A stretch of DNA of 64,000 nt from IMGVR_UViG_3300026521_000003:124001-188000, one strand, 5' to 3'; counted from the stretch's first letter, positions 5,212-62,662 are shown. The notes: generated by a model from the letters alone, not told the origin. Made by a program: numbers and translations.

Positions 5212-5409
5212 ATGAGAATTTCAAAATTATTTGAATCAGCACCTAGAAAGAAAGGAAAAACTACTGCTAATGATGTAAGAGTGTGGTTAGATAAAATAAA
5301 TAATGGTGAAGCTACTGAAGAAGATATACAATTATATGATGATTTAAAAAGCATATCACGAAAATTAGGTGGAAAAACAACAGTAATAGAAATACTTAAA
5401 GCGATTTAA
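5212..5409 (+). CDS. small late protein, putative head-internal protein
   Basis: AATAAATA and AGGAG upstream; leader MRISKLFE|S. Confidence 0.6.
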   Translation: MRISKLFESAPRKKGKTTANDVRVWLDKINNGEATEEDIQLYDDLKSISRKLGGKTTVIEILKAI

Positions 5410-5433
5410 TATAGGGATATTTATCCCTATATT
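5408..5433. terminator. bidirectional intrinsic terminator
   Basis: aatatagggat-attt-atccctatatt inverted repeat between convergent genes. Confidence 0.7.
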
Positions 5434-5441
5434 ATTATTTA

Positions 5442-6146
5442 TTAAAATATTTTACCTAATAAGACTCTCGATAAATCTTCAAGTTTATATAAACTTACAT
5501 CTTCAAACCAATGTATATTAACACCAGAGCCTTTTAAAAATTCTAACGATTTGAAATATGCATCTCTACGTTTATTTAAAATATCTATATCTAAAGTATC
5601 ATTAGAGTCTACTAAACCATTTTCAATATCTATTTCTGTTCTTTCAATTATTATCTCATTTGGTAAATCAAGAAATATAATATCTGTCGGCATTTTTATA
5701 AATTTATTTGTATTGAGTGCAACTTTTATAAATTCTAGATCGGTTCTACTATTATTATAAAATGCTTGGTATGCTAATGTAGATATAAAATAACGATCAA
5801 ATAGATAATTCGCCTCATCAATTATATTAGTATTTACAATTTGGTTATTGTTGTTAGTAGTTTCATTAATAAGTTTAGTATTTAAAAATAATTCATTCAT
5901 CCAATAGTGACTCATTTCGGATAAAAAATTAGGAGTGTTTACTATTGATAAATCTGGATTTGATGAATTTAATTCATTTCTAATTATAGCTCCAATAGGG
6001 GTAGATGCATTTGGGAATGAAAACCTATTTAATTTTTTCCCATTTGTTCCTTGCATTTGATTCCATACCATTTCAAACGAATCACAAAATGAGGATTTTC
6101 CAGTTTTATCAAGACCTTCAACGGCTATAATTTTATTAATTATCAT
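5442..6146 (-). CDS. tmk: thymidylate (dTMP) kinase
   Basis: P-loop AVEGLDKTGKSS, FP...TPIG..IR, DRYFISTLAYQ, P.DIIFLD. Confidence 0.9.
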   Translation of the reverse strand: MIINKIIAVEGLDKTGKSSFCDSFEMVWNQMQGTNGKKLNRFSFPNASTPIGAIIRNELNSSNPDLSIVNTPNFLSEMSHYWMNELFLNTKLINETTNNNNQIVNTNIIDEANYLFDRYFISTLAYQAFYNNSRTDLEFIKVALNTNKFIKMPTDIIFLDLPNEIIIERTEIDIENGLVDSNDTLDIDILNKRRDAYFKSLEFLKGSGVNIHWFEDVSLYKLEDLSRVLLGKIF

Positions 6147-6240
6147 AATTTAATACCTTTTTATTTTATTTATTTTTTATTTTACAATTTTGTCTAAATA
6201 AAGAATAAATAAAGATAATTAATAAAAACGGAGATTTAAA

Positions 6241-6867
6241 ATGTCTAGACTAATTAATATTCTGAATAAGAATAAAATGATAAAATTAAAAGAAGCCGAT
6301 GAAGAAGCTCCGGCTGAAAATACTGATGAATTAACTTTGGATGATACTTCAGCTGATACTAAAGATCCTGGAGCAGGTGAGGCTCCAGTTGAAGGTACGG
6401 AAGAAGTTCAAGATGATACTACTGAAGATGAAGAAACATCAACTAATGATGAAAAAGACAATATGGATGACGTTCCAACAGAAGAAAAAGATGATATGAA
6501 TACACCCACAGAAGACATTGATAAAGCCATTGAAGAAATGATAGGTATGACGGAAATTCAACATACATCTAGTTCAACGATAATTGATTTTGAGGATGGG
6601 GGACAAGTAATGTTTGTTCATCCAATGGTATCATTAAAAAGTGAAACATTGAATGAAATAATTAAATTGATTATGAAAGACATAACAAAGACTTATGCCT
6701 CAAATAAAGATGAAATAACAGGAAAAGATCTAAATAAAACGAGATATTGGAAAAGTTTGAGTACTCTTATTGAAACTATGGTTAGAAGTCAATTAACAAA
6801 AAGTGATAATATGAATGGTTTGATTGATGAAATTAAACAAGTATTTAAAGTTTTAGAAGTAAAATAA
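6241..6867 (+). CDS. acidic late protein, putative head/prohead-associated
   Basis: AATAAATA upstream, leader ending LKE|A, D/E-rich low-complexity N half. Confidence 0.55.
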   Translation: MSRLINILNKNKMIKLKEADEEAPAENTDELTLDDTSADTKDPGAGEAPVEGTEEVQDDTTEDEETSTNDEKDNMDDVPTEEKDDMNTPTEDIDKAIEEMIGMTEIQHTSSSTIIDFEDGGQVMFVHPMVSLKSETLNEIIKLIMKDITKTYASNKDEITGKDLNKTRYWKSLSTLIETMVRSQLTKSDNMNGLIDEIKQVFKVLEVK

Positions 6868-17958: not shown

Positions 17959-18274
17959 AATGTGGAGTATTATTTATAAATTTGATACTCCAAAATTGGT
18001 AACTATTAAAGATATAATTACAACTAAAAATAGTCTAAAATATAAAGTTGAATATAAAAATAGATTGTTTGAAATTTTAAATATGGATATGTATCCATCA
18101 AAAATAGATGCTGATATATTTTGGGCAATTACGATGCAAGAAGAATTTAAATATACACAAAAACACCCGACTTTATTTATGACAGATGAATTTGAAATTG
18201 CAGTAAGAAAAGCAGATAAAATAATATTATATTATGCTGAAAATAATCCAGATATTTTATTAAAGTATTTTTAA
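17939..18274 (+). CDS. hypothetical protein, paralogue of previous gene
   Basis: Probable start MYQIDSK after GGGA. Confidence 0.6.
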   Translation: MYQIDSKMWSIIYKFDTPKLVTIKDIITTKNSLKYKVEYKNRLFEILNMDMYPSKIDADIFWAITMQEEFKYTQKHPTLFMTDEFEIAVRKADKIILYYAENNPDILLKYF

Positions 18275-18471
18275 GATATTACTACTTTGAATTCTCTACC
18301 TGGATAATGATCTTCATTTTTATAAAACTCACATTTAAAACTTCTTTCAGAAACTCTAAAACTGAATTGTTTTTTTGCACTTTTAAAAATTGAACAACCA
18401 TCAAAATGGTCACAACATATACACGCATAGTAAGTACAAGACTTTTCATTTAATATTGTATTTAATTTCAT
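18271..18471 (-). CDS. small Cys-rich late protein with MKLNTILNE leader
   Basis: TATAAATA on the minus strand at 18495-18502; CTYYACICCDHFDGC...C putative metal site. Confidence 0.6.
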   Translation of the reverse strand: MKLNTILNEKSCTYYACICCDHFDGCSIFKSAKKQFSFRVSERSFKCEFYKNEDHYPGREFKVVIS

Positions 18472-18543
18472 AGGACCCCCTTATAAATTTATATTATTTA
18501 TATAAAAAATGTAAAATATACTAAAATCTTATAAAGGTGAAAT

Positions 18544-21746: not shown

Positions 21747-21796
21747 AAAATTTTTTAATATAAATAACAATAATAATTAAAATAGAAGGAAAAAAA

Positions 21797-22360
21797 ATGA
21801 ACGTAACACGTTATATAAAAGAATTATCTCTATTGGAAGAATCTGAAAGAAAATCATATATTGCTCATTTGGAAATAAAAAATTATGGTTCGAATGAATT
21901 GACTGAAACTGAAATGTGGATATTGACAAATGCCAGTCAAAATGCAGAGTATCTTAATGATAAATTAAAAGAAGCCGAAGAGTTATCATTGGATCTAGAA
22001 GCACCAGAAGAAACAGAAGAAAAAGTAACTATTGAACCCGATTTGACTGTGGATGATAATGAAAGTAATGATGAAGAACTAAGTTTAGATATACCATCAG
22101 AATCAGAACCAACAACTGAAATAGACTCTAATAATGACAATGATACAGAATTAAGTTTAGATGTTTCTGATGAAGAATCAAATCAGCCAGATGAAGTAAG
22201 TACAGATAAAGACGCATCTGAGAAAAAAGAAATTGAAACATCAAAAGAAGGGATAGGCATTCTACCTTTATTAGGTGAAATTCAAGAAAAATTAGCAAAT
22301 GGGAAACCATCGGAAGTTGAATTAGCAGCACTTAAAGCGTTAAAGAAATTAGTAGGATAG
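21797..22360 (+). CDS. acidic late protein, putative head-associated
   Basis: TATAAATA at 21759-66; ELSLD repeated three times in a D/E-rich linker. Confidence 0.6.
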   Translation: MNVTRYIKELSLLEESERKSYIAHLEIKNYGSNELTETEMWILTNASQNAEYLNDKLKEAEELSLDLEAPEETEEKVTIEPDLTVDDNESNDEELSLDIPSESEPTTEIDSNNDNDTELSLDVSDEESNQPDEVSTDKDASEKKEIETSKEGIGILPLLGEIQEKLANGKPSEVELAALKALKKLVG

Positions 22361-23017: not shown

Positions 23018-25180
23018 ATGATTAAGATTGAAACGTTAGAAAATTCAAAATATAAATTTGGATACCCATATAATGATTCAATAGATGTTTTTTTTGAAAG
23101 TCTACCTGAAAGTTTTATAAATGTTTATAATTTAACTGATGATGAAATAACTCTTATGCATGAATTTAAAAATAAAGTATTAGAATTAGATAGATCATTA
23201 TTTAAAAGTCTTTTAGAAATTAACTCCTTTATATTTGAATTTAATAATGTTGGAAAAGTTTTACAAGATGATTATGATGAACTTATGAATGATTATAATG
23301 CATTATTAGTTGAATTAGATAATTTACGTATAGAATTTGATCAAGTAGTTAAAACTTTTGATGATTACTCTAATACAATCTCACAATTTAATGATGATAT
23401 TGTGAAATTAGATGAGTTGGTATTATATTATTCGAGTAAACTAGTTGATAATACATATGTGTATAATAACGATTATATTGATAAAACTACATCAGATTTA
23501 ATGGTAATTGATGATGTGATCGATCAATCTAATCAAGAATATTTATATTATAAAGATAAACTTAAAATTACTATTGATGAAATGATTTCAAAACTTTCAA
23601 ATTTAGGTGACTATGATTTTTACCAAGTAAGTTTAAAGACTTCATACGAAGAATGGCTCAAAAGACCTGAGGATTATTATAAACAATTAGTAGTGTATTT
23701 TAAAGAAGAGTATGATTCGATATGGACTTATGGCAGTAGTCTTATGTATGATGAACATTTAGAGTACGTTAATATTTCTAAAGCATTAGTCGAGGAAACA
23801 TATTATATAATGCGTGGCCATTTATTTAAAAATTATTCCTTTAAAATTGAGAAAGATATAAAACTTTATTCATTAGAATGGTTAGAAAACCATGAAACGT
23901 TTGAATATGATGAATTTACAATTGCAATAGAGAAAAAGAAAAAAGAAATTATAGAATCTAAATTGATAGAAATTGAAAATATTATAGCATCTTCATCTTT
24001 TGCATTAAACTCTGTTATTTCAAAAGAGGATATGGATGTATATTATTTATATAAAGAAATAGTATTAGAGAAACGAAAATACATATATCTTCACATTGAT
24101 AATATTACAGATGATGTGCTTGAAAATTATAATCTGCGTATTGAAGAGTTATATCCGACATATTTAAAAGTTGAAAATAAGCTTAATCAATCAACCTATT
24201 GGATTTATTATTATGACTTAGAACAATATAAATTTATACGTGATGATTTACAACGTCAAATAACTCTTTCAGATCTAATAATTAGTCAAGAAGCTCAACA
24301 AACTTTAAATAATAATGAAGAATATGTTTCAAAAATTAATTTTTATACTTTAGAAAAAGATTCATTATTATTAAAAATAGATGATTTAATAGAATTGAAA
24401 GATAAGGTTGAAATTGAAAAAAATGTATATGGTGATGAAATAACAATAAAAGAATCAAAATTATTTGAAATGTTGGAAAAGAAAGAAGAATTAGTGGATA
24501 GTTATAAAAATTATTTTATGACTAGATTAGATTTTTATATTAATAATATCATACAACGTGATATAGATATTTATACTATTATTGCAGAAGGATTTAATCT
24601 GTCATATGTATTGCAGTTGGATGAATTAGATAGTACAATCCCTAATAATATTTCATGGTATGATAAAGATAATAAAGATAAATTATTTGGATATTATTAT
24701 TATATACTTGATACGTTAAAAAATAATTTAAGTGATCAATGGGAAGTAGAATTTAATCATGAAATTTATATTAATGAGTATATTAAAATTATGAATGATT
24801 ATCTAAATATAGTCATGCTTGAATATTTTGCTTGGAGTAATAAGTTTTTATTAGATGAAACATTTGATAATGAATTGAACTTAAATATAGATGTCTATGA
24901 AACTAAACTAATTAGTATATTTAAGGAATTATCAGAGAAAGCATTTAAATATAAGGTTAATATTATGGTTAAAAAAGATATGTTTGATTATGAAATTGAA
25001 CAAGTTTTTTACATTGATAATACATTAGGTGATATTGAAAGTATTAACAAAATTTTTAAAGGTATATTGGATAATATTCGATATATACTAGTATTAAAAA
25101 ATAGTGAATATGGATCTTTAATAGATAAGATTGAAGAAAATATAGAAATTAATAAAATATGGGATCAAATTGGGGTGTAA
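23018..25180 (+). CDS. large acidic coiled-coil late protein
   Basis: 720 aa; TATAAATA at 22983-90. Confidence 0.7.
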   Translation: MIKIETLENSKYKFGYPYNDSIDVFFESLPESFINVYNLTDDEITLMHEFKNKVLELDRSLFKSLLEINSFIFEFNNVGKVLQDDYDELMNDYNALLVELDNLRIEFDQVVKTFDDYSNTISQFNDDIVKLDELVLYYSSKLVDNTYVYNNDYIDKTTSDLMVIDDVIDQSNQEYLYYKDKLKITIDEMISKLSNLGDYDFYQVSLKTSYEEWLKRPEDYYKQLVVYFKEEYDSIWTYGSSLMYDEHLEYVNISKALVEETYYIMRGHLFKNYSFKIEKDIKLYSLEWLENHETFEYDEFTIAIEKKKKEIIESKLIEIENIIASSSFALNSVISKEDMDVYYLYKEIVLEKRKYIYLHIDNITDDVLENYNLRIEELYPTYLKVENKLNQSTYWIYYYDLEQYKFIRDDLQRQITLSDLIISQEAQQTLNNNEEYVSKINFYTLEKDSLLLKIDDLIELKDKVEIEKNVYGDEITIKESKLFEMLEKKEELVDSYKNYFMTRLDFYINNIIQRDIDIYTIIAEGFNLSYVLQLDELDSTIPNNISWYDKDNKDKLFGYYYYILDTLKNNLSDQWEVEFNHEIYINEYIKIMNDYLNIVMLEYFAWSNKFLLDETFDNELNLNIDVYETKLISIFKELSEKAFKYKVNIMVKKDMFDYEIEQVFYIDNTLGDIESINKIFKGILDNIRYILVLKNSEYGSLIDKIEENIEINKIWDQIGV

Positions 25181-25182
25181 CA

Positions 25183-29643: not shown

Positions 29644-30012
29644 ATGGGTCGATTAACAGATTTATTGTCAGCTAATAACGTAGTTGAAAATAAAATAAAG
29701 ACGAATAAAATAACTACTAAGTTAGATACTAATACGATAACTGAAAGTGAAACAAGTACCATAGGAACTCTAACAGTTGATGAATATCAAATGGTTAAAG
29801 ATTCTATAAAACAAATTGATATGAATAATAAAACAAGACGAGAAATTATAATAGGTATGTATGGAAGTATTACCAATCCTAAAACTAATAAAAGGTTTGT
29901 TATCCCTATGCTTTCATATCAAGATGAAGACTATATATATCAATATGCAAAGTATATGAAAACATTAATTAATAGACCTGAAGAGTTTACAAAAGTAATG
30001 GAAATGGAGTAG
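29644..30012 (+). CDS. hypothetical late protein, first gene of the AAA/vWA operon
   Basis: AATAAATA near 29595 and AGGAG RBS. Confidence 0.6.
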   Translation: MGRLTDLLSANNVVENKIKTNKITTKLDTNTITESETSTIGTLTVDEYQMVKDSIKQIDMNNKTRREIIIGMYGSITNPKTNKRFVIPMLSYQDEDYIYQYAKYMKTLINRPEEFTKVMEME

Positions 30013-30015: not shown

Positions 30016-33000
30016 ATGAATAAATTGAAATCTATAATATTAACAGAAGCATCATTAAATGATAAAATAACATCTAGAGCAAAAATAACGTATGATGCAT
30101 TAATAGCAATAATTTTAGCAACTGATGATGGTAAAATCACAGATAAAAATAAAAAAGAAATAGCTGATGAATTAGATATTACTATTCCTACATTAGAACG
30201 GTATATCAAACAAGCAGTCACAAATAAATTTATTAGTTCATCTGGAGAGGTTCTTGACAAATATAAAAAGGAATCTACTGGTAAAGTAAAAGCATCGGGT
30301 AAAGTATCTCAAGCATTAAATGCGAGAGTTAAAAAATTTAAAGCACCAAAAGTTTCTTCTAATAATTTATTTTCTGAACAAGTATTTAAAATGTTATCAT
30401 TAATGGATGGTCAAGCAGCACAGGCAGGTGTTAAAAACTCATTAATGTTGACAGGAGATCCTGGAACTGGAAAAACTTCATTTATTCGTAATTTCGCTAA
30501 ATTATTAGGATTACCTCTTATTCCAATAGAGGCACCTCATATTACAGAAGAACATATTATAAATATACCATTTATGATTATTAGAGGTAATAAAGTAAAA
30601 AAAGAAAATGCTATTATTGAAACTGCTGGAAAAGCAAATTTGGATGATAAACAAGAATTTGATATTGTTCAAGCAGAATCAAATCTAGTCACTAAATTAA
30701 AAGCTATGAAGAATCTTAAACTAAAAGATCAACAACATATTGCATCAATAGCTAGTGATAAAAATTTAAGACCTATATACTTAAATTATAAATCATTAAT
30801 TGATTCAATTAGAGATAGTTACCATTGTATTTTATTTTTAGATGAATATTATAGAAATGATAATATGAAAATCAGAAATATTCTTAGAAATATTTTAAAT
30901 GGGCGAATAGGTAATGATAAAATACCAAAAGGGACATTTATTGTTTATGCATCAAATATGGAAGATGATGGTGTTGAAGATATTCCTATGAATAACGATT
31001 TTGCAGAAATGGAATTTAAAACTCCTGATAGAGAACAATGGTTTAAATATATATTAAATAAATATGAAGAGAATTCAGGAAATGATTATCCTGGTGTAAA
31101 ACTGCAACCAGAAGTTTTTAATAAATTTTATGACGTATTAGAGCAATCAGATTTATCATATGAAGATGCTACAGCAGAAGTTAGAAATTCTCCAAGAAGA
31201 TGGGAGCAAATATTATTATATGTTAATGCATCTTTACCGGTATCAAATATTAAAGAAGCTAGAACATTAATGTCAAATTTACAAGTTAATTTTAGAAATT
31301 ATACTGAAGAAACTGTTTCAAATTTATATCCTAAATTTGAAAAAATGGTAGTTGGATTAATTAAAGAAACTTCAGGAATTGAATTTGATGGACGACCAAC
31401 TAATCAAGTTGATTGGAAAGATACTCTCCAACAACAATTAGAAGTTAAAATTAAATTAGATGGACAAAGTGATTCTGAGAAAGAGGTTAGACAATACGTG
31501 CCTGTTGTTTCGGGTGAACCTGGTATTGGTAAAACGGCGCATATGAGAACGGTAGCTGATGATTTAGATCTCCATTTTATTCATATTGATGTATCGACAT
31601 TAACTAGAGAATCAACTACCGGTATTCCTAAAGCAAGTCAAGCAACAGATATTGATGGTAATCCAGAATTTGATCAAAATGGTAATCCTGTTATGACCAC
31701 AGAATTTTCAAAACCTGAATTGTTAGATTTGATTGAGAAAAAAATGCAAGAAGAATTAGCTGAAGATGAAATGTTTCCAGAAGATCAAAGAAAAAAAGGT
31801 AAAGGTAAATATAGATTTTTATTATTATTTGATGAATTAACAAGAGCAGATGCACAAGTCTTCAATGCTATTAGAAAATTATTATTAGAGAAATCATTTA
31901 ATGAACAATATGATTTACCAAAATCAATTATGACTGTTGGTGCTCTCAATCCAGTTGATAATGGAGCAGAAGAATTAACAAAACATATGAGAGATGTATT
32001 GGATATTATTCCATCTAGAGCATCATGGGCTAAAACAGAATCATACTTATTGAGTGAAGAACGTCCTGTTGGATTAGAAGAAGTTATGGGGTTTGATTTA
32101 AATACTGCAACAGTTGGAGCATTAAAAGGTTTACTACAACAATATCAATCTAAAGATGAAGATTGGAGAGGTAATCCAGTTTCAAAAGAAGAGCGATTAT
32201 TCAATTTACGAGATGGGTCAAATATAATTTATATTTCGCCAAGAGAAATTACGGATATTGTTACTATGACTAATGCTAATATCGTTAATAGATTAACAAA
32301 AGTTGGATTAAAAAGTTTTTCAAATGAAGTTCAATCTGAAGAAGTAGATGGTATGAGTGATGATGAATTTATGCAACTTATGATGCAACAAGCTGAAAAC
32401 CCAGATAGTGTAAAGGAAAAAATTGCTCAAGATAAGGGTATTTTTAATTTAAGAAATAGGTATAGTGAAGAAGATTACGATGTGTTTATAAGAGCTATGA
32501 TTAATGAATTTCGGGAAGCGTGGGCTTCAAAATTAACTTTTATTTGTAAAAAAATGGATATTGATGCGGCAAACGTTTTATCATTAACAACAGGTTTTAT
32601 ATCTACAAATAGTGTAGTATATGATCAATATGAGGCTATTAAAACATTAGTTGTGGATGATGTTAAAAATATTGAAGAAATGTTCGATGCTTATTGGGAT
32701 AATCCAGAAGAATTATATGATTCACCGCATTTTGATAATTATTTAACTGTAAACTTTACAGCTCCTCAAAAATTTACACAAGAAATAACAGATTATTTAA
32801 GTGATAAATTGGTGGAAATTGAACAAGATACTAGTACGGATATGGTAACTGTTGAATCTGAAAATGGACCTGTTGAAATTCCTAAAAATATAGCTAAGAA
32901 GATGGAATTATTTTATAAGTATATTTTATATACAAAGTCAATATTAAAAGTTTTAACTGATAAAAGTGAATATGCAGGGAAAGTAAAAGAGGCTCAAAGA

Positions 33001-33183
33001 ACGGGTCAATATCTAAGTAATCTTCATATCGCATTACAAATGCATGGTAAAGATTTTATGTCTAAAAGTGGATTATTACCATATGTATTAAATAAAAATC
33101 TTGATGCTGATATGGTTAAGAAAGTATCGGAAGCAGGAAATGAAATTAGAACAATGTTAAGTAATTTTGGTATTAAAGGTTAA
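30016..33183 (+). CDS. tandem MoxR-like AAA+ ATPase (two AAA modules) with N-terminal HTH
   Basis: HTH KKEIADELDITIPTLERYIK. Module 1: GDPGTGKT / ILFLDEYYR / VYASN / SPRRWE. Module 2: GEPGIGKT / LLLFDELTR / VGALN / SPREI. Confidence 0.85.
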   Translation: MNKLKSIILTEASLNDKITSRAKITYDALIAIILATDDGKITDKNKKEIADELDITIPTLERYIKQAVTNKFISSSGEVLDKYKKESTGKVKASGKVSQALNARVKKFKAPKVSSNNLFSEQVFKMLSLMDGQAAQAGVKNSLMLTGDPGTGKTSFIRNFAKLLGLPLIPIEAPHITEEHIINIPFMIIRGNKVKKENAIIETAGKANLDDKQEFDIVQAESNLVTKLKAMKNLKLKDQQHIASIASDKNLRPIYLNYKSLIDSIRDSYHCILFLDEYYRNDNMKIRNILRNILNGRIGNDKIPKGTFIVYASNMEDDGVEDIPMNNDFAEMEFKTPDREQWFKYILNKYEENSGNDYPGVKLQPEVFNKFYDVLEQSDLSYEDATAEVRNSPRRWEQILLYVNASLPVSNIKEARTLMSNLQVNFRNYTEETVSNLYPKFEKMVVGLIKETSGIEFDGRPTNQVDWKDTLQQQLEVKIKLDGQSDSEKEVRQYVPVVSGEPGIGKTAHMRTVADDLDLHFIHIDVSTLTRESTTGIPKASQATDIDGNPEFDQNGNPVMTTEFSKPELLDLIEKKMQEELAEDEMFPEDQRKKGKGKYRFLLLFDELTRADAQVFNAIRKLLLEKSFNEQYDLPKSIMTVGALNPVDNGAEELTKHMRDVLDIIPSRASWAKTESYLLSEERPVGLEEVMGFDLNTATVGALKGLLQQYQSKDEDWRGNPVSKEERLFNLRDGSNIIYISPREITDIVTMTNANIVNRLTKVGLKSFSNEVQSEEVDGMSDDEFMQLMMQQAENPDSVKEKIAQDKGIFNLRNRYSEEDYDVFIRAMINEFREAWASKLTFICKKMDIDAANVLSLTTGFISTNSVVYDQYEAIKTLVVDDVKNIEEMFDAYWDNPEELYDSPHFDNYLTVNFTAPQKFTQEITDYLSDKLVEIEQDTSTDMVTVESENGPVEIPKNIAKKMELFYKYILYTKSILKVLTDKSEYAGKVKEAQRTGQYLSNLHIALQMHGKDFMSKSGLLPYVLNKNLDADMVKKVSEAGNEIRTMLSNFGIKG

Positions 33184-33188: not shown

Positions 33189-35378
33189 ATGAATTTTTTA
33201 GAAGATATAGAAAATCTAGCTTCAATATATTTAAATGAAGCGGGTTTGAATTATAAACATAAAAAAAAGGGTGAAACCCCCTTTGAAAAAACTGATGGGA
33301 CTGAATTTCATATTCAAACCATACTTGAAAAATTTGCAGAAGCTAATAAAATTACTAAGCAGGAAGCACAACAATATTTTGATTTAAAAAAACAAGAAGC
33401 TATAGATAATATGAAAAAATCTATGAAAATTAATGGTACTATGATTGATAATATTGGTGAGAGTATTGCATTTGAAATGTTGGAATCTATCGAAATAGAA
33501 GATATTAAATTTAATAAACGTACTTTCTTAGATTTATTTGAAAAGGTAAAATATGAAGTGCCAGAATTTTACCCTCTTTCAAATTCATTTGAACCTAGAC
33601 GAATAGAACCAAAAATTGTTTTTGTACCAGATCCATTGTCTCCAGAATATGCTAGTGTAGGTACAGCTGCATGTACACCAACTGCAACATTAATATTTAA
33701 TGTTCCTTTTTTAGAAAATCTTATGAAATTTTCAAATATAAAAGGTCTTAAAGCTAATCCAAATTTTTTACATGGTCAAAAGTATGTATCACAAGGTGGA
33801 GATATTCCTGATGAATATCTGTATTGTGAATTTGTTTTATTACATGAAATTATGCATTATGCTAATGGAGATTTCTTTTTTGAAAAAGCTTTCAATTTAA
33901 ATGGGAAATTAGTCAATTATGTCGGAGATTTCATAACTAATTATAATTTGGTTAAAAGTGGTTATGCTCAATTACCGATAGGTTTATTTAATGATGAAAT
34001 TAATTATGATCGTTATAATTCATATCAAGAAATGTACAATGTAGTTGAAGAAGAAATGAAACGATTATCTGATGAAGAAAAAGAAAAAATGATGGATCAG
34101 TTAGATCAATTAGGTGATGAAATGCCGGATGAGGGAGAAGGTGCAGATCCTGAAAATAAGAATGGACAACCTCAAGATGGACAACCTCAAGATGGACAAC
34201 CTCAAGATGGACAACCTCAAGATGGACAACCTCAAGATGGACAACCTCAAGATGGACAACCTCAAGATGGACAAAATGGTTCTGGAGATGGTGAAAAATC
34301 AGATGATAAACAAGATGGACAAAATGGTTCTGGAGATGGTGAAAAATCAGATGATAAACAAGATGGACAAAATGGTTCTGGAGATGGTGAAAAATCAAAA
34401 GAAGAGTTAGATAAAGAAGCTCAAGAAGCTGAAAAAAGAGCAAAAGAAAGAGAAGAGGCAGAAAATGAAGGTAAAACTTCTGGAACAGTTCCAAAAAGTA
34501 TTGATGATGCCATTAAACAAAATCAACAAATGCAACAAAAAGGTCAAGAAGACTTAGGACGAGAAACAAAACCCGGAATGAATAAAGATGGTATGCAACC
34601 CGGTGATATATCAAATATTATGAAAGGTAATAATAATGGAGGACCGTTAAGTGCTGATGGAAATCCATATGCTCTTCCTGAAAGACAATATAAACCAAAG
34701 TTAAATTGGAAACAAATGCTTAAGAAAATGATACCTAGTGGTACTGATAAAGACGAAACTTATACGAAACCATCGAGACGAACAACTTCATCGATGGTAT
34801 CTATAGCTCAAACAGGTTCTGGTGTTGTTAAACCAGGAATTAAAGAAAATCCTTCAGATAAGAAAGGTTTATGTTTTGTATTGGATGAATCTGGTTCTAC
34901 AATGGGTGCAATTGGTGAAATGAAATCAGCTATCCTAAAACTTATGGAGAAAAATGCAAAACAACTTAATGGTATTATGTATATTATTAAGTTTTCAAAT
35001 GATGTACATTTATTTAAAGTAGATGTTAAAAAGAAAAAATATGGTCGAGTAACAAATATCCAAGAGTTTATTAAAACTGGTAAATCGGATATTAAATGTA
35101 CTAAAAATGCATTGGAATTATTTAAATCTACTTATGGTGGTGGAACAAATTTAAATAGTAAAATTGCTAATATTGTTATTAAAATGAAAACACAATTAAA
35201 TTTTAATACTGTTATATTTAGTGATACAGATATAGCATATGGTGATAATGCTCAAACACTTAAACGTATGTATAAACAATTAGGACCAAAAGCATTTGCT
35301 TTAATAGGTACTGATCTTGAAGATTATAAAGCTTTTGTTAAACTTTTAGGCGACAAAAAAAATATTACTCACTTTTAA
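33189..35378 (+). CDS. HEXXH metallopeptidase-like + acidic repeat linker + vWA (MIDAS) protein (DUF2201-like)
   Basis: TAAC...LIFNVPF, FVLLHEIMH, D..TN, LNWKQML...TYTKPSRR, FVLDESGST, GGGT, VIFSDTD. Confidence 0.85.
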   Translation: MNFLEDIENLASIYLNEAGLNYKHKKKGETPFEKTDGTEFHIQTILEKFAEANKITKQEAQQYFDLKKQEAIDNMKKSMKINGTMIDNIGESIAFEMLESIEIEDIKFNKRTFLDLFEKVKYEVPEFYPLSNSFEPRRIEPKIVFVPDPLSPEYASVGTAACTPTATLIFNVPFLENLMKFSNIKGLKANPNFLHGQKYVSQGGDIPDEYLYCEFVLLHEIMHYANGDFFFEKAFNLNGKLVNYVGDFITNYNLVKSGYAQLPIGLFNDEINYDRYNSYQEMYNVVEEEMKRLSDEEKEKMMDQLDQLGDEMPDEGEGADPENKNGQPQDGQPQDGQPQDGQPQDGQPQDGQPQDGQPQDGQNGSGDGEKSDDKQDGQNGSGDGEKSDDKQDGQNGSGDGEKSKEELDKEAQEAEKRAKEREEAENEGKTSGTVPKSIDDAIKQNQQMQQKGQEDLGRETKPGMNKDGMQPGDISNIMKGNNNGGPLSADGNPYALPERQYKPKLNWKQMLKKMIPSGTDKDETYTKPSRRTTSSMVSIAQTGSGVVKPGIKENPSDKKGLCFVLDESGSTMGAIGEMKSAILKLMEKNAKQLNGIMYIIKFSNDVHLFKVDVKKKKYGRVTNIQEFIKTGKSDIKCTKNALELFKSTYGGGTNLNSKIANIVIKMKTQLNFNTVIFSDTDIAYGDNAQTLKRMYKQLGPKAFALIGTDLEDYKAFVKLLGDKKNITHF
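34164..34397 (+). repeat. coding tandem repeats: 7 x 15 bp (GQPQD), then ~2.7 x 48 bp (GQNGSGDGEKSDDKQD)
   Basis: Perfect ggacaacctcaagat units followed by perfect 48-bp units. Confidence 0.95.
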
Positions 35379-35814: not shown

Positions 35815-35828
35815 AAAGGAAAAAATCA

Positions 35829-38476: not shown

Positions 38477-38920
38477 TTACATATCTTCTTCAGTTTCTGC
38501 AAACTCAGAAATACCTTCAATATCAGCTAATGCTTTCTTTAGGAAATTCTTTTTATTTCCGGCAGCTCTTAAAAGTTTATCTTTTCCACCATGTGCTTTA
38601 ACTAATAATTCCATATAATCAATAGTTTCTTTAGTTAAATTACCTTTTAATAATTTTCTAAATGCCATAATATCACCACTCATAAATGCACTAATAATTT
38701 GATTTCTAGCTTCAACAACTTTATCATCTTTTAAGTTACTTAATGCTTTTTTAGCTTGCATTTTTGAAACTTTACCTTTACCAGTAATTACTTTGAATGC
38801 TTTACTTCTATCTTTTTTATATTTTGTTGCGATTTTTTCTTTTGATGCTTCACTTAAAACTTCATCAGTCTCAACAGTATTTAACTTTTCAACTTCATTT
38901 AGAATGTCCATTAATTTCAT
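38477..38920 (-). CDS. basic late protein, putative head-internal protein
   Basis: TATAAATA on the minus strand at 38954-61; leader MKLMDILNE...VLSE|A; Lys-rich body. Confidence 0.65.
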   Translation of the reverse strand: MKLMDILNEVEKLNTVETDEVLSEASKEKIATKYKKDRSKAFKVITGKGKVSKMQAKKALSNLKDDKVVEARNQIISAFMSGDIMAFRKLLKGNLTKETIDYMELLVKAHGGKDKLLRAAGNKKNFLKKALADIEGISEFAETEEDM

Positions 38921-57408: not shown

Positions 57409-57452
57409 AATTTTTTCTTTAATCTATATAAATAAAAGAAAAAGAAGGAATT
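57409..57452 (+). promoter_or_regulatory. late promoter (57427-34) within an RBS-sequestering hairpin
   Basis: aattttttcttt (57409-20) can pair with aaagaaggaatt (57441-52), including two G-U pairs. Confidence 0.55.
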
Positions 57453-57456: not shown

Positions 57457-57720
57457 ATGAAATTATCGGATATGCTAAATAACTCTGAAGAAATGGTTGA
57501 AGCTTGTAAAAAGAAAAAGAAAAAAGTTTTAAAAGAAGAAGATATGGTTATTTGTGCTAAATGTGGAGAAGAGTATAGTACGTCAGAGGATAAATGTCCA
57601 AAATGTGGTTCAATAGAAACAAAAGCAATTATGAAAGAATCGGTTGAAACATTAGTTGAAACTGAAAATGCGGCTGAAAAAGCAGAGATGGATTATTTAC
57701 TTAAATTATCTGGGATTTAG
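57457..57720 (+). CDS. small late zinc-ribbon protein
   Basis: CAKC...CPKCGS; leader MKLSDMLN; ends YLLKLSGI. Confidence 0.7.
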   Translation: MKLSDMLNNSEEMVEACKKKKKKVLKEEDMVICAKCGEEYSTSEDKCPKCGSIETKAIMKESVETLVETENAAEKAEMDYLLKLSGI

Positions 57721-57722: not shown

Positions 57723-57917
57723 ATGAATTTACGAGATATAAATGAAAGTATTATTAATTTATTAGAAGCTCCAACACATTTATTACGATTAAAACGTAAT
57801 AAAAAGAAAATTATGAAAGGTACAGTTGAAACGATTGATGCTTTTCTAGATGGTAAAGATATGTCAAAATATGAGATTATCTCATTAGATAATTTAGATG
57901 AAGAGAATGGGAGATAA
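57723..57917 (+). CDS. small late protein
   Basis: Leader MNLRDINE|SIINLLE|A. Confidence 0.55.
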   Translation: MNLRDINESIINLLEAPTHLLRLKRNKKKIMKGTVETIDAFLDGKDMSKYEIISLDNLDEENGR

Positions 57918-58957: not shown

Positions 58958-59776
58958 ATGAGTAATTTATTTCAAACCCTAGAACAGTTATCATCTGATC
59001 TTATGGAAAAATCAAAAAATGCTAGAACAAAAGCTGCAAAATTAGCCTATGAAGATTCTGCTATGTTATTATTAAATGAGATTAATAGGTTGAATAAGGA
59101 AATTGAAGAAGACCAAAAAGCTAAAATAGAAGCTCAAATGAAAAAATTTGATATTCATCATCAAGATTATACAACACTTTTATCGAGAGGCCATATTGGC
59201 ATCCCCAGTAATATTCATGCTGAAATTTCATCATTTACGGTGGGACAAAAGAAAGCAGGAGAAGTTTTTCAAAATTTAAGTGAAGATTATAAACATGATG
59301 TACTAAATCATTTAGCCGCAGATAAAGAAATGATTGAACAATTAGTAGCATACCGTCATAATTATCATTATATTACTCACACAAAAGGTCATGATGGTAT
59401 TGATGAAGATAATAATGTATATGAAGTTAAAAATAGAAAATATGTTTATAAAAAAGATAAACGTGCAAATTGTGATCTTATTTTTGATAGAATTTCAAAA
59501 GCTACTGAAAGAAAATTTCGAGAAGGGCGCCCAACAATTATAATGAATATGACTGATGGTGCAAAATTATTATTAGAAATGAAAATACGTTTTTCAGACG
59601 AATTATTAGATCTTTATAGTGAAAAAGTTGAAGCATTAAAATCATCAAAAACATCTGGATTTGCAATTCCATTTAGTGAATATAAAGATTATATTGAAGA
59701 AATAACTTATGTGTGTAATGATATTGACCAATACCATATACAAAAACAGGTATTGGATTATATAACTTTATCTTAA
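58958..59776 (+). CDS. putative PD-(D/E)xK restriction-like endonuclease
   Basis: E...KGHDGIDEDNNVYEVKNR; early-type promoter at 58910-31. Confidence 0.55.
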   Translation: MSNLFQTLEQLSSDLMEKSKNARTKAAKLAYEDSAMLLLNEINRLNKEIEEDQKAKIEAQMKKFDIHHQDYTTLLSRGHIGIPSNIHAEISSFTVGQKKAGEVFQNLSEDYKHDVLNHLAADKEMIEQLVAYRHNYHYITHTKGHDGIDEDNNVYEVKNRKYVYKKDKRANCDLIFDRISKATERKFREGRPTIIMNMTDGAKLLLEMKIRFSDELLDLYSEKVEALKSSKTSGFAIPFSEYKDYIEEITYVCNDIDQYHIQKQVLDYITLS

Positions 59777-61482
59777 GCGTTTTTAAGTCGACCAGAACCA
59801 GGTTTCATAATACCATTAGAAACAGCTACTCCAATCACAGCCTTTTTATTTTGGGGTATTTTTGTAAGAAAACTAAATTTTTCTTTAAGAGTTTTTTTAA
59901 GTGCATCAATTAAATTAGTTAGTGTTTTCACTAGATTATAATTGTGTAAAAGAATAATAATTGTTATTAAAGCCATTAGAATATGATTGCCTGTTATTTG
60001 TTCACCCAATATAGTAAATTCACCGAATGGTCTTTGATCTCTTAACCAAGGACATTGTGGTGGGCAGGTTGTAATATCTTTTGGGTGTTTAATACCTAGA
60101 TAATACCAAAATAAAGTAGGACCATATGCACTACTGAACCAATCATTTAAACTATATTTGCCTGCCATAGTTACTAAAACTGCAGTAAAATCAAAATCAT
60201 ATTTTGGGTCACCAATAAAAAACATTTGTGTCCATATATGATATGCCATTTTTGCGAGATAATATCCTAGAACCATCTTTAAACCTCTTACGGCATAAGA
60301 TAATGGTTTTTTAAGATTATCTGGAATTTTATAGCCTAATATTTCATCTTTTGTACCAGCTTCAAGTTCAGATAAAAAAGTATTAAATTCATCTATTTTT
60401 CTATCCCAATTTTTAATAAAAGCTAATTCTGTAAATGGTTTGAACATTTTTGCTTGAACCCCAGCTAATTTTTCCGACATTTTTATTGCTCCGGCTTCAA
60501 CCATCTTTTTAAGTTTATTTGCAAACGATTTCATGGCTTTCATAAAACCTTCATTTCTAAAGATCCCTACTAATTCTTTCCATCCATTTTTAAGGTTTTT
60601 AACAACTAGTTTAAACATTCCGACTGCCCATTTCCAACCTGCTGCTATCTTTTGTAATATATTATCAACAGATAGATTGCTTAGATCGACTGCTATTTGT
60701 TTAAGGGTATCTAGATTTTTTTTAATATCGGTTTTTAAATTTTGTAATAATGATTTTGAAGCTGCATCTAAATCTTCTAATCTTTTAGATTTTTCATTAA
60801 ATAGAGCAAGTTTTTCTTTTATTGTATTAATTGTTATTGCGTATGCATCTGCCTCTTCATTATCTTTTTGTGTTAGTGCTTCTTTTTCTAAGGTATCAAT
60901 CTCTTTAGTTAAACTTTCAAGTTCTTTTATTAAATTATTTTTTTCTTTTTCTTCCTCAGGAGTTAATTCTCTTGAACCAACTATACTATCCATAGCTCTT
61001 TTTGCCAATTCTTTAGCATTATCTAAAAATCCCTCATTTAAAGCTTCATTTAATAGACTATTATTTGATGACACATCTATTAACATCTCATTTAATGTCG
61101 GGTCTGTTTGAATTGTGTCTTTAATTTTTTTATCTAACTTATTAATAAATTTCTCAAATACTTTATCATTATTCAAACGTCCTTCATCATAATAATTAAT
61201 TTCATTTGAAATATGTTCAACAATGGTTTTAAAAAAAATATCATTTAATGATTCATAATATCTGTTAGATTCAAGGGTTTCATATATTAATGATAGTTTG
61301 TTATTTTCGGGTTGAGAAATTTTATATGGTACTAATGCATTAGCAATTCTTGCTATTTCAATAGCATCTTTATCAATATAATCATCTACTTTTAATTCAA
61401 TCAAATAAGTTTCAACTTCGGAACCCACATTAATAATGTCTGCTTCATTAAAAATATCCGTGAATGATTTTATTTTTGTCAT
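59773..61482 (-). CDS. late protein with coiled coil and C-terminal hydrophobic segments, putative head-internal/ejection protein
   Basis: AATAAATA upstream; leader ...IFNE|A; internal LLNEALNE|GFLD; hydrophobic MVLGYYLAKMAYHIW and ILMALITIIILL. Confidence 0.6.
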   Translation of the reverse strand: MTKIKSFTDIFNEADIINVGSEVETYLIELKVDDYIDKDAIEIARIANALVPYKISQPENNKLSLIYETLESNRYYESLNDIFFKTIVEHISNEINYYDEGRLNNDKVFEKFINKLDKKIKDTIQTDPTLNEMLIDVSSNNSLLNEALNEGFLDNAKELAKRAMDSIVGSRELTPEEEKEKNNLIKELESLTKEIDTLEKEALTQKDNEEADAYAITINTIKEKLALFNEKSKRLEDLDAASKSLLQNLKTDIKKNLDTLKQIAVDLSNLSVDNILQKIAAGWKWAVGMFKLVVKNLKNGWKELVGIFRNEGFMKAMKSFANKLKKMVEAGAIKMSEKLAGVQAKMFKPFTELAFIKNWDRKIDEFNTFLSELEAGTKDEILGYKIPDNLKKPLSYAVRGLKMVLGYYLAKMAYHIWTQMFFIGDPKYDFDFTAVLVTMAGKYSLNDWFSSAYGPTLFWYYLGIKHPKDITTCPPQCPWLRDQRPFGEFTILGEQITGNHILMALITIIILLHNYNLVKTLTNLIDALKKTLKEKFSFLTKIPQNKKAVIGVAVSNGIMKPGSGRLKNA

Positions 61483-61558
61483 AGAAGATTCCTTTTTCTT
61501 TTTATTTATTCAAAAAAATGTAAAATTAGTATATAATTAGAATAAAGAGAGTTTTAAA

Positions 61559-61858
61559 ATGAGAACAGATATTACACATTCATTTGAGGATTTTGAACGC
61601 ATAGCAGAAGATTATTTTGAATTAATCCCTCCTGATACCGATTCATTTGATTTAGAATTATGTACGTTTTGGGAGTATGAGGAATGGGATAAATTATTGA
61701 TTTTTCATTTTGATAATGAAATGGATTTAAATTTTTTCTATGATAAATTAATTGAATGTCCAAAGTATGAAGAATCTTTTGATATAGAAGATCATTTTGA
61801 AGGTGTAAATAGAAAAGTATTAACAATCACAATTGAATCAAAAAGTACAGGATTATAA
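61559..61858 (+). CDS. acidic hypothetical protein
   Basis: 99-aa ORF downstream of TGTAAAAT (61519-26). Confidence 0.55.
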   Translation: MRTDITHSFEDFERIAEDYFELIPPDTDSFDLELCTFWEYEEWDKLLIFHFDNEMDLNFFYDKLIECPKYEESFDIEDHFEGVNRKVLTITIESKSTGL

Positions 61859-62662
61859 ATGAAATTAAATAAATTATATGAAAAAATTTCGGGGTTAATA
61901 GCGTTAGAATTATATGATAGCAAAACTAGTAAAGAAGCAGTCGAGCAAGAATTTTCTAAAGAGTTTTTATTTTTAAATAATATGAATAAAGATCTATTTA
62001 AAGATTTATCTGATGATGAACAGTTTCAAGTTTTACGAATATATGATGTTCACTTTAGAATTGGTGCACCGATGATCACAGATGCAGAATATGATTTATA
62101 TGATTCTATATATAAACAAGAAACAAATGATACTACTCCAATTATGTTTGAACCTAGTGTACAAGCTTGGGAGAAGGAAAAACATACTATTGTTATGGGT
62201 TCATTGAGTAAATGCAATACTTTAGAAGAAGTAGAGAAATGGAATAATAAGCCTAATATTATTGCTAGTCATAAAGTTATATCTGAAAAACTAGATGGGA
62301 TTTCTTTAGAATTGATATACGAGAAAGGTGTATTTAAAAAAGCTATTACTAGAGGAGATGGTAAAGTCGGTGAGAATATAACTGAAAATGCTATTTATTT
62401 TGATGGTGTTGTAAAAGAATTAGGAGAAAAGCTAGATTGTGCTGTAAGAGGCGAGGTTATGATTTTAAAGGATAACCTTAATAGTATTAATACTATTCTT
62501 TTAAGAGAAGGAAAGGATGCATTAAAGAATACTAGAAATGGTGTTGCCGGTCAAGCAACTAAATTTAAAGATAGAAATGAGGAAATATTATCTCTTATAA
62601 CCTTTATTGCATATGAAATTCAAATTTTTAATATTTCTCATACAGGTGAAAATGTTCTTTAA
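61859..62662 (+). CDS. ligA: NAD+-dependent DNA ligase, N-terminal (Ia + partial adenylation) part only
   Basis: ITDAEYD, H...MGSLSK, SEKLDGISLELIY, AITRGDG.VGENIT, VRGEV, NTRNGVAG, FIAYE; stops before motif IV, OB fold and BRCT. Confidence 0.85.
   Translation: MKLNKLYEKISGLIALELYDSKTSKEAVEQEFSKEFLFLNNMNKDLFKDLSDDEQFQVLRIYDVHFRIGAPMITDAEYDLYDSIYKQETNDTTPIMFEPSVQAWEKEKHTIVMGSLSKCNTLEEVEKWNNKPNIIASHKVISEKLDGISLELIYEKGVFKKAITRGDGKVGENITENAIYFDGVVKELGEKLDCAVRGEVMILKDNLNSINTILLREGKDALKNTRNGVAGQATKFKDRNEEILSLITFIAYEIQIFNISHTGENVL

What the first reader, a model, noticed from the sequence alone, without database searches (positions are those of the whole stretch)
5212..61900. Shared N-terminal leader M(K/N/R)(L/I)xx(I/L)(L/F)xE on about a dozen otherwise unrelated proteins
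Seen: MRISKLFE|S (5212), MSRLINILN...LKE|A (6241), MKLNTILNE|K (18471-), MNVTRYIKE|LSLLEE|S (21797), MGRLTDLL (29644), MNKLKSIILTE|A (30016), ...IYLNE|A (33189), MKLMDILNE (38920-), MKLSDMLN..MVE|A (57457), MNLRDINE|S (57723), MTKIKSFTDIFNE|A (61482-) and MKLNKLYE (61859). All except 61859 lie in units behind (T/A)ATAAATA. Known: T4 internal proteins carry a ~10-aa capsid-targeting sequence removed by gp21 protease after (I/L)xE. Inference: this leader marks the phage's packaged and injected proteome, which would include two tiny metal-binding proteins and possibly the ligase fragment.
Basis: partly seen in the sequence, partly recalled or inferred. Interest (0 to 1): 0.75.

Follow-up and report, generated by a model that had tools for sequence, protein, structure and literature searches.

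The report
T4-style capsid-targeting leaders, jumbo phage
About ten otherwise unrelated late proteins of this uncultured T4-related jumbo phage start with a short leader built like the T4 capsid-targeting sequence, so they are probably loaded into the head and trimmed by the head protease, which would let the packaged proteins be read from sequence alone.

Summary
The quoted N-termini are all present. The written consensus is loose: it strictly fits only 2 of the 12, and a bare (I/L)xE near an N-terminus is common by chance and unrelated to promoter class.

A signal does remain under a stricter test. I took the motif from the functional positions of the T4 IPIII leader (h..hh.E, E at or before residue 14). 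It occurs at 21% of N-termini behind late-promoter-like sites, against 6.6% inside the same proteins. In other genes it occurs at 6.6% against 6.5%.

- The phage encodes a gp21-type prohead protease, and its capsid, scaffold-like, protease and portal proteins carry the same hxE sites.
- Leaders are kept in distant homologues of five listed proteins (5212, 21797, 30016, 33189, 38920-).
- Relatives with 42-43% GC carry their own versions on many proteins, e.g. MKTFKQFLSE against T4's MKTYQEFIAE. This argues against an AT-bias artefact.
- In cultured Ralstonia phage RsoM2USA, two leader-bearing proteins and the homologue of the window's AAA ATPase are reported among abundant virion proteins.

29644 fails, and 61859 (the ligase piece) is doubtful. 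Packaging, cleavage and injection are unproven for this phage. Verdict: a probable new member of a known kind.

The parts
5212..5409 (+). 65-aa basic protein (pI 9.4), leader MRISKLFE|SAP. Strong candidate for an internal-protein-like cargo.
   Evidence: AATAAATA at 5184-5191. Fits the T4-type architecture. Seven distant homologues (40-64% id) all start MR[LIT]..[LI].E|SA[PV]G. 100% identical in close relative G001.
6241..6867 (+). 208-aa very acidic protein (pI 4.3). Leader-like MSRLINILNK with K in place of E, then IKLKE|A at residue 18. Possibly a core or scaffold-accessory protein.
   Evidence: AATAAATA at 6204-6211. Sequence and pI. N-terminus kept in G001 at 91% identity. No distant homologues examined.
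18271..18471 (-). 66-aa Cys-rich protein, leader MKLNTILNE|K.
   Evidence: TATAAATA at 18495-18502 on the minus strand. Fits both the title regex and the architecture regex. Intact ORF at 88% identity in G001, with MKLNTLLNE. No orthologue in L020.
21797..22360 (+). 187-aa acidic protein (pI 4.1), leader MNVTRYIKE|L and a second site LLEE|S.
   Evidence: TATAAATA at 21759-21766. Architecture hit. The 40%-identical orthologue in L020 starts MNKFKELLKE|L behind an ATAAATA site. LLEES is kept in L006.
29644..30012 (+). 122-aa protein MGRLTDLL..., first gene of the AAA operon. Probably not leader-bearing.
   Evidence: AATAAATA at 29595-29602. No architecture hit; the only hxE is VVE at residue 15. 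Orthologues in L010-L012 have no conserved hxE.
30016..33183 (+). 1055-aa double AAA+ (MoxR-like) ATPase, leader MNKLKSIILTE|A.
   Evidence: Pfam AAA and AAA_5 hits. Orthologue N-termini end LLTE|A, ALEE|A and LME|A. 34% identical (E 1e-145) to RsoM2USA ORF86, a 96.4-kDa protein assigned to an abundant virion band.
33189..35378 (+). 729-aa DUF2201_N metallopeptidase-like protein, leader ending IYLNE|A at residue 17.
   Evidence: Pfam PF13203. 49 of 50 homologues (28-71% id) have hxE in the first 36 residues. 35 of 50 have hxE[AS], against 5% of interior windows. The AAA gene lies next to it in every relative examined.
38477..38920 (-). 147-aa basic protein (pI 9.3), leader MKLMDILNE|V plus a second site VLSE|A. 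The best internal-protein analogue.
   Evidence: TATAAATA at 38954-38961. M1, L3, I6 and L7 are invariant among four orthologues that are 28-39% identical overall. Nearly all of 35 homologues start M[RK]L[MI][ED]IL.E[VA], and most have a second hL.E|[AS] followed by KKK.
57457..57720 (+). 87-aa zinc-ribbon-like protein. MKLSDMLNN with N in place of E, then MVE|A at residue 15.
   Evidence: TATAAATA at 57427-57434. Weak zinc-ribbon Pfam hits below cut-off. No comparative data.
57723..57917 (+). 64-aa protein MNLRDINE|S ... LLE|A, 2 nt downstream of 57457.
   Evidence: Sequence. Architecture hit only for the second site at residue 15. No comparative data.
59773..61482 (-). 569-aa orphan protein, leader MTKIKSFTDIFNE|A.
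   Evidence: AATAAATA at 61503-61510. Architecture hit. The only homologue (92% id) keeps FTDIFNE while the residues before it change. No family or Atlas lead.
61859..62662 (+). 267-aa N-terminal piece of a split NAD-dependent DNA ligase, starting MKLNKLYE|K. Doubtful member.
   Evidence: PF01653 positions 4-164 start at residue 104. The rest of the ligase is at genome 10239-11600. No late-promoter motif upstream of its unit.
1670..2419 (+). Leader-like, function unknown.
   Evidence: AATAAATA at 1637-1644. Member of the N-terminal similarity cluster. No Pfam hit.

Best explanation
The window belongs to a 290-kb, 27% GC, uncultured T4-superfamily jumbo phage. A subset of its late proteins carries a 8-25 residue N-terminal propeptide that works like the T4 capsid-targeting sequence (CTS).

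**Proposed mechanism**
1. Two hydrophobic residues three apart (L3 and I6 in MKLMDILNE) dock the protein onto the scaffolding core while the prohead assembles.
2. The following h-x-E is the cleavage site of the phage's gp21-type serine protease.
3. After the shell closes, the protease cuts after the Glu and the leader peptide leaves.
4. The mature protein stays in the head with the DNA and may be ejected into the host.

**Likely cargo in the window**
- two small basic proteins (5212, 38920-);
- two acidic proteins (6241, 21797);
- the AAA+ ATPase and DUF2201 pair (30016, 33189);
- a 569-aa orphan (61482-);
- less surely, three small proteins (18471-, 57457, 57723).

**Shown:** the protease gene, the motif architecture, its restriction to late-promoter genes, its conservation at protein level, and virion presence of homologous or analogous proteins in a cultured relative.

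**Inferred:** binding to the core, cleavage at the marked Glu, retention in the head, and injection.
For: **1. The machinery is present.**
- Peptidase_S77 at E 1e-34 and PHROG head maturation protease at E 1e-66.
- 5JBL (T4 gp21) aligns at E 7e-21. His and Ser stand where the deposited chain has Ala, and the Asp is kept.

**2. The same site occurs in known substrate classes.**
- The capsid protein has LVE|S, LLE|G, ILE|N and LNE|A before the gp23 core. Its residue 41 aligns to residue 16 of mature T4 gp23*.
- The scaffold-like protein has 26 [IL]xE sites. The protease begins MADLLIE|S, and T4 gp21 has LIE-9 (PMC9026906).

**3. The architecture matches T4.**
- In T4 IPIII, MKTYQEFIAE, residues 4 and 7 target and residues 8 and 10 direct processing.
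- The regex h..hh.?E with E at or before residue 14 hits 17 of 80 late-promoter genes (21%), against a 6.6% interior rate (p 1.5e-5).
- It hits 16 of 243 other genes (6.6%), against 6.5% (p 0.52). Fisher p is 5e-4.

**4. The leaders are conserved.**
- DUF2201 family: 49 of 50 homologues.
- 147-aa family: nearly all of 35 homologues.
- 65-aa family: 7 of 7.
- AAA orthologues and the 21797 orthologue.

**5. It is not composition or a DNA cassette.**
- Relatives at 42-43% GC carry MKTFKQFLSE-type and MRYTDLFE-type leaders on many proteins.
- Leaders differ at synonymous sites and in their upstream DNA.

**6. There is experimental support in a relative.**
- In RsoM2USA, ORF89 (MKTFKQFLSE|S), ORF132 (MKTFKQFLNTLME|A) and ORF86 (the AAA homologue) were assigned to abundant virion bands (PMC8504454).
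- Their predicted masses match the GenBank tags.
Against: - No proteomic or N-terminal data exist for this phage, which is an uncultured IMG/VR record.
- The motif carries little information. About 6.5% of any 14-residue stretch matches, so perhaps a third of the late-gene hits are chance. One hit looks like an ordinary DnaJ-type N-terminus by eye (genome 27158, not tested).
- In RsoM2USA the AAA homologue itself has no leader, and ORF38, another reported virion protein, has none. A leader is therefore not necessary for virion presence.
- The RsoM2USA paper gives band assignments as 'most likely'. Two of its ORF masses (257, 438) do not match the GenBank tags.
- The generic regex is not enriched over the first 124 kb of RsoM2USA: 9 hits against 10.6 expected.
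- In some DUF2201 homologues the called leader is only 3-4 residues long (MLNE|A, MRE|A). The conserved E-A-F could therefore be part of the mature fold rather than a cleavage site.
Confidence: 0.6

Rival explanations
1. It is a composition and helix artefact. In a 27% GC genome the cheapest codons give K, N, I, L, E and D. N-termini are often amphipathic helices, so MKLxDILNE-like strings arise without any shared function.
For: - A bare [IL]xE at residues 5-12 occurs in 20% of all proteins and is equally common in late and non-late units.
- The architecture regex matches 6.5% of interior windows.
- Column shuffles recover most of the N-terminal count: 26.0 against 33 observed, p 0.065.
- 29644 and probably 61859 look like such chance cases.
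Against: - The N-terminal excess is confined to late-promoter genes, while interior rates are the same in both classes.
- Leaders are conserved in homologues only 28-40% identical overall.
- Relatives with 42-43% GC have equally stereotyped leaders.
Confidence: 0.15
2. The leader is a real, conserved N-terminal tag with another role. Candidates are docking to the phage's own AAA+/ClpS-ClpA machinery, acting as a degradation or assembly-chaperone signal, or targeting to tail or baseplate assembly rather than the head core. It is not necessarily cleaved.
For: - ClpS and ClpA-like genes sit directly after the AAA/DUF2201 pair, and this order is conserved.
- Virion presence in RsoM2USA does not say which part of the virion is involved.
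- Some non-head late proteins also match, e.g. the tape-measure-like 2212-aa protein.
Against: - The tag ends in the exact site class of the gp21 family.
- The same sites sit at the capsid, scaffold and protease maturation positions.
- It matches the T4 CTS position for position, most clearly in RsoM2USA: MKTFKQFLSE against MKTYQEFIAE.
- ClpS recognises free N-terminal L, F, Y or W (my own knowledge), and neither the leader nor the predicted mature ends would expose one.
Confidence: 0.15
3. The similarity lies at the nucleic-acid level: a shared translation-initiation or downstream-box element, or a mobile promoter-RBS-leader cassette that shuffles genes.
For: Leaders sit right behind a conserved late promoter and a strong RBS. 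A-rich early codons are known to favour initiation (my own knowledge).
Against: - Identical residues use different codons, e.g. GAC/GAT, ATT/ATA, CTA/TTA, GAA/GAG. The 20 nt upstream differ between genes.
- RsoM2USA leaders likewise differ at third positions.
- Operon-internal genes with no promoter of their own also carry leaders (30016, 33189).
Confidence: 0.05

Closest known systems
T4 capsid-targeting sequence (CTS) of internal proteins IPI/IPII/IPIII and Alt, processed by gp21 (Mullaney & Black 1996; reviewed in PMC9026906 and PMC3012670)
   Same: - A short N-terminal leader on otherwise unrelated proteins.
- Hydrophobic residues three apart, followed by h-x-E.
- A gp21-family protease in the same genome.
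- The same site class at the capsid, scaffold and protease termini.
- Small basic cargo proteins (5212, 38920-).
   Different: - No sequence homology to the T4 IPs (no PHROG or Pfam hit).
- The register is shifted by one residue (L3/I6/L7/E9 against Y4/F7/I8/E10).
- Many more candidate cargoes: about 10 in this window, with an excess of about 12 among the 80 direct late-promoter genes genome-wide.
- The cargo includes a 1055-aa AAA+ ATPase and a 729-aa DUF2201 protein.
- Several leaders have two sites.
- Function is untested here.
[quoted passage not shown]
   Same: - The only cultured phage in the collection with the AAA/DUF2201 pair.
- It has its own stereotyped leader, MxTFKQFLxE, on at least 12 proteins.
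- ORF89, ORF132 and the AAA homologue ORF86 were assigned to abundant virion bands.
   Different: - The leader dialect sits in the exact T4 register.
- The AAA homologue lacks a leader and the first ~110 residues found in the window protein.
- The paper does not mention leaders or processing in the passages read.
Propeptides of phiKZ/SPN3US head and ejection proteins, cut by the S80 protease (gp175/gp245) at S/A/G-x-E (PMC5694885)
   Same: Jumbo phages load many proteins into the head. A gp21-related protease cuts after Glu, and sites are often multiple within a propeptide.
   Different: - P3 is small (A/S/G) there and hydrophobic here.
- Those propeptides are long and not a shared 10-residue leader.
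- This phage's protease is a clear S77 member, not S80.

Membership tests
T4-type CTS / gp21-processed propeptide system | The genome encodes a gp21-family (Peptidase_S77) prohead protease with catalytic residues. | tested here: met
   PF03420 at E 1e-34 and phrog_207 at E 1e-66. The alignment to 5JBL keeps His, Ser and Asp. That the Ala residues in 5JBL are engineered catalytic mutants is my own recollection.
T4-type CTS / gp21-processed propeptide system | A leader of about 10 residues with hydrophobic residues at positions equivalent to IPIII 4 and 7 (targeting) and 8 and 10 = h-x-E (processing). | tested here: inconclusive
   - Strict fit for 6 of the 12.
- Variants backed by orthologues for 30016 and 33189.
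- Glu replaced, with a later hxE|A, in 6241 and 57457.
- Partial fit in 57723; none in 29644.
T4-type CTS / gp21-processed propeptide system | The same cleavage-site class at the maturation sites of capsid, scaffold and protease in the same phage. | tested here: met
   - Capsid protein: ILE30|N and LNE41|A flank the position that aligns to the mature T4 gp23* N-terminus.
- Scaffold-like protein: 26 [IL]xE sites.
- Protease: LIE7|S.
T4-type CTS / gp21-processed propeptide system | The leader is shared by proteins that are otherwise unrelated. | tested here: met
   All-against-all BLASTP without the first 20 residues gives nothing better than E 0.3.
T4-type CTS / gp21-processed propeptide system | Made when proheads assemble (late expression). 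| tested here: inconclusive
   Only promoter-like motifs could be read. The N-terminal excess is confined to genes with ATAAATA at -20 to -58. No transcript data were used.
T4-type CTS / gp21-processed propeptide system | The protein is present in the head and the leader is removed after Glu. | not testable with these tools
   Indirect only: RsoM2USA virion band assignments for ORF86, 89 and 132. Processing was not reported there.
T4-type CTS / gp21-processed propeptide system | The leader alone is sufficient to encapsidate a foreign protein. | not testable with these tools
   This needs a fusion experiment. The predicted protease-leader complex gave no answer.
T4 internal proteins IPI/IPII/IPIII (sequence homologues) | Detectable homology of the mature part to the T4 IPs. 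| tested here: not met
   No PHROG or Pfam hit for the small leader proteins. They are functional analogues at most.
MoxR-type AAA+ with VWA/DUF2201 partner | An AAA+ ATPase gene next to a DUF2201_N (PF13203) gene. | tested here: met
   AAA, AAA_5 and AAA_3 hits in 30016, and PF13203 in 33189. The two genes are adjacent in L007, L009-L012 and RsoM2USA. The VWA-like PF09967 domain was seen only in the most distant homologues.

The most novel reading that the evidence does not exclude
A broad, mostly uncultured clade of T4-related jumbo phages uses a CTS-like address label as a general loading system. The clade includes this phage, its 30-38% GC relatives, a 43% GC lineage and the RsoM2USA group. 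Each lineage has its own dialect: MKLxDILNE, MRYTDLFE or MKTFKQFLSE. The label sits on ten or more cargo proteins per genome, including a conserved AAA+ ATPase/DUF2201 enzyme pair that travels in the virion. If so, the packaged and probably injected proteome of such phages can be read from sequence, and the dialect co-evolves with the scaffold core and the protease.
Probability: 0.45. Interest if true: 0.65.

Novelty: new member of a known kind. Interest (0 to 1): 0.55.

Why it matters
Proteins loaded into phage heads and ejected with the DNA are the first phage products to meet host defences. T4's IPI*, for example, blocks a restriction enzyme. In jumbo phages these proteins are numerous and mostly unknown.

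A leader that can be recognised from sequence would name the candidates in uncultured phages. Here these include an unexpected AAA+ ATPase/DUF2201 pair. It would also give a ready tag for loading foreign proteins into such capsids, as is done with T4. The concept itself is established for T4, so the gain is in reach and cargo, not in principle.

Tried and rejected
- The loose motif ([IL]xE, [ILFMV]xE, hNE) tested against promoter class showed no association. I dropped it for the T4-derived architecture.
- [ILFMV]xE[AS] within residues 5-20 is only weakly associated with late units: 10% against 4%, p about 0.05.
- The generic architecture regex is not enriched over the first 124 kb of RsoM2USA: 9 hits against 10.6 expected. 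Only the lineage-specific dialect is rare there, matching 6 of 1189 open frames.
- The predicted complex of the protease with residues 1-40 of the 147-aa protein gave no answer. It is not evidence either way.
- For the 569-aa protein, the homologue search found one 92% relative only. Pfam, PHROGs and the Atlas gave no lead.
- RsoM2USA ORF257 and ORF438 could not be matched by mass to the GenBank tags, so I did not use them.
- Walking the 264-kb relative upstream lost synteny; it encodes HSP20, HSP70, Amt and P-II there. The 58-kb relative's contig ends before the 5212/6241 orthologues.
- Metagenome contigs could not be searched as handles.
- A megablast of the window against cultured phages found nothing.
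- The RaK2, XacN1 and PA5oct papers report no leader or N-terminal processing data in the passages read.

Full report
**Setting.** The window is bases 124001-188000 of a single 289,880-bp contig with 27.4% GC. It is an IMG/VR virus record rated 87% complete. The window holds a T4 gp15-type tail sheath stabiliser, fibre-like proteins, a UvrD-type helicase, a topoisomerase II subunit, ClpS and a ClpA-like ATPase. Elsewhere the genome has a gp23-type capsid protein, a weak T4-type scaffold match, a Peptidase_S77 prohead protease and a gp20-type portal in T4 order. The capsid protein is at most about 32-35% identical to those of cultured jumbo phages of the Rak2/121Q type. This is therefore a distant T4-superfamily jumbo phage with no close cultured relative.

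**Checking the observation.** Every quoted N-terminus is present. Each except 61859 lies behind (T/A)ATAAATA 28-49 nt upstream, or 2-5 nt behind such a gene. That octamer is not over-represented overall, but 72 of its 269 copies lie 20-50 nt before a called start. The twelve proteins are unrelated beyond the leader.

The written consensus is loose. It fits only 18471- and 38920- strictly. A bare [IL]xE with E at residues 5-12 occurs in 66 of 323 called proteins, against 40 expected from interiors and 50.6 from column shuffles. It is equally frequent in late and non-late units.

**A sharper test.** In T4 IPIII the leader is MKTYQEFIAE. Residues 4 and 7 carry the targeting, and residues 8 and 10 carry the processing (PMC9026906). 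I turned this into a pattern taken from T4 rather than from this genome: h..hh.?E with the Glu at or before residue 14.
- Genes with ATAAATA at -20 to -58: 17 of 80 N-termini match (21%), against 6.6% of interior windows of the same proteins (p 1.5e-5).
- All other genes: 16 of 243 match (6.6%), against 6.5% (p 0.52).
- The contrast between the two classes gives Fisher p 5e-4.

The hits include the scaffold-like protein, the protease and the portal. N-termini are also more alike than column-shuffled controls, and the largest cluster is M[KR]hx[DE]hhx[ED]. So there is an N-terminus-specific, late-gene-specific excess of about twelve proteins among direct late-promoter genes, on a background where roughly a third of the hits are chance.

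**The same sites in head proteins.** The capsid protein begins MAQVQPKMLVE|SLLE|G...ILE|NEANYAETLNE|ATFSG. Its residue 41 aligns with residue 16 of mature T4 gp23*. The mature end should therefore fall near ILE30 or LNE41. The scaffold-like protein has 26 [IL]xE sites, about half followed by Ser or Ala. The protease starts MADLLIE|S, and T4 gp21 has LIE-9. The protease keeps His, Ser and Asp at the positions aligned to T4 gp21.

**Conservation.**
- *33189 protein (DUF2201_N).* It has 50 full-length homologues at 28-71% identity. 49 have hxE in the first 36 residues. 35 have hxE[AS], against 5% of interior windows. The leaders vary in length and end just before the conserved body, e.g. MRFNQLLNE|A, MKLHDIME|A, MKKLERLIAE|A.
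- *38920- protein (147 aa).* M1, L3, I6 and L7 are invariant among four orthologues that are 28-39% identical overall. Nearly all of 35 homologues start M[RK]L[MI][ED]IL.E[VA], and most have a second site, hL.E|[AS], followed by KKK. That predicts a basic mature protein, as for the T4 internal proteins.
- *5212 protein (65 aa).* Seven distant homologues all start MR[LIT]..[LI].E|SA[PV]G.
- *AAA ATPase (30016).* Orthologue leaders end LLTE|A, ALEE|A and LME|A.
- *21797 protein.* Its 40%-identical orthologue starts MNKFKELLKE|L.
- *Close relatives only.* They keep the cores of 6241, 18471- and 61482-.
- *29644 protein.* Its orthologues have no such site.

**Not an AT-bias or DNA effect.** A 43% GC contig that carries the AAA/DUF2201 pair has MRY(T/S/H)(D/E)L(F/Y)E on four proteins, and looser leader-like starts on at least five more. 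Ralstonia phage RsoM2USA has about 42% GC and is the only cultured phage in the collection with the pair. It has MxTFKQFLxE-type leaders on at least a dozen proteins, some in paralogous families and others unrelated. In both genomes identical residues use different codons, and the upstream DNA differs.

**Experimental support in a relative.** The RsoM2USA paper assigns the ten most abundant virion bands after LC-MS/MS (PMC8504454). The list includes ORF86 (96.44 kDa), ORF132 (76.64 kDa) and ORF89 (28.57 kDa). The GenBank tags give 96.43, 76.62 and 28.56 kDa.
- ORF86 is 34% identical (E 1e-145) to the window's AAA ATPase.
- ORF89 starts MKTFKQFLSE|S, and ORF132 starts MKTFKQFLNTLME|A.
- That dialect matches only 6 of 1189 open frames in the first 124 kb.

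There are caveats. The assignments are worded 'most likely'. ORF86 and ORF38 have no leader. ORF257 and ORF438 could not be matched by mass.

**Best explanation.** The leaders are CTS-like propeptides. They dock cargo on the scaffolding core and are removed by the gp21-type protease after Glu, leaving the cargo in the head. I put this at about 0.6 for the core set: 5212, 21797, 30016, 33189, 38920- and 61482-. It is lower for 6241, 18471-, 57457 and 57723. It is unlikely for 29644 and doubtful for 61859. Docking, cleavage, retention and injection are all inferred. The rivals (composition artefact, a tag with another role, a nucleic-acid signal) are weighed in their own sections.

**Comparison and novelty.** It works like the T4 CTS, with a one-residue shift of register. 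It is not homologous to the T4 internal proteins. The differences are the number of candidate cargoes, frequent double sites, and large enzymes among the cargo. The review I read already suggests that the CTS may be a general way for T4-like phages to load diverse proteins. This is therefore a new member of a known kind, not a new principle. I found no paper describing these leaders in jumbo phages, although the library is incomplete.

Noticed in passing
window 61859-62773 and genome 10239-11600: The NAD-dependent DNA ligase is in two pieces more than 110 kb apart.
- The window ORF has a ~100-aa N-terminal extension plus adenylation-domain positions 4-164.
- Homology runs on through two TAA stops to position 212.
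- A 453-aa ORF elsewhere holds positions 175-251 plus the OB fold.
- Both pieces start with leader-like N-termini: MKLNKLYE|K and MKIINKELFE|K.
   Followed up: partly
window 35506-38132: The phage encodes ClpS (102 aa) and a full ClpA/ClpB-like double AAA ATPase (767 aa) directly after the AAA/DUF2201 pair. This order is conserved in three metagenomic relatives (L010-L012).
   Followed up: partly
window 30016-30400: The window's AAA ATPase has about 110 extra N-terminal residues, consisting of the leader plus further sequence. RsoM2USA ORF86 lacks them; the alignment starts at residue 129.
   Followed up: no
L013 (RsoM2USA 48524-74305), L016, L017, L018: RsoM2USA has a very stereotyped leader, M(x)TFKQFLxE. 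It is almost the T4 CTS (MKTYQEFIAE) position for position. It sits on ORFs 61, 81, 89, 90, 132, 254, 255, 385, 403, 404 and probably 438. ORF258 and ORF437 carry looser versions.
   Followed up: partly
L007 373-15764: A 43% GC metagenomic phage contig carrying the AAA/DUF2201 pair has its own dialect, MRY(T/S/H)(D/E)L(F/Y)E. It includes three tandem ~250-aa genes starting MRYSDLFE, MRYTDLFE and MRYTDLFE.
   Followed up: no
L021 1301-5988: The 264-kb relative encodes HSP20, HSP70/DnaK, an ammonium transporter and a P-II protein just upstream of the syntenic block. These look like auxiliary host-type genes and are absent from the window.
   Followed up: no
window 23018-29574: Two large late proteins (720 and 1471 aa) have no family hit. 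They precede the AAA operon in all relatives and may be virion components.
   Followed up: no
window 39537-43817: A 1426-aa fibre-like protein has by far the strongest codon bias in the window and locally raised GC (34%).
   Followed up: no
genome 274313-274657 (-) and 265516-265677 (-): Two leader-bearing genes outside the window (MKLKDILLE|M and MKFKNLKE|S) sit behind CATAAATA rather than (T/A)ATAAATA. The late promoter may tolerate any first base.
   Followed up: partly
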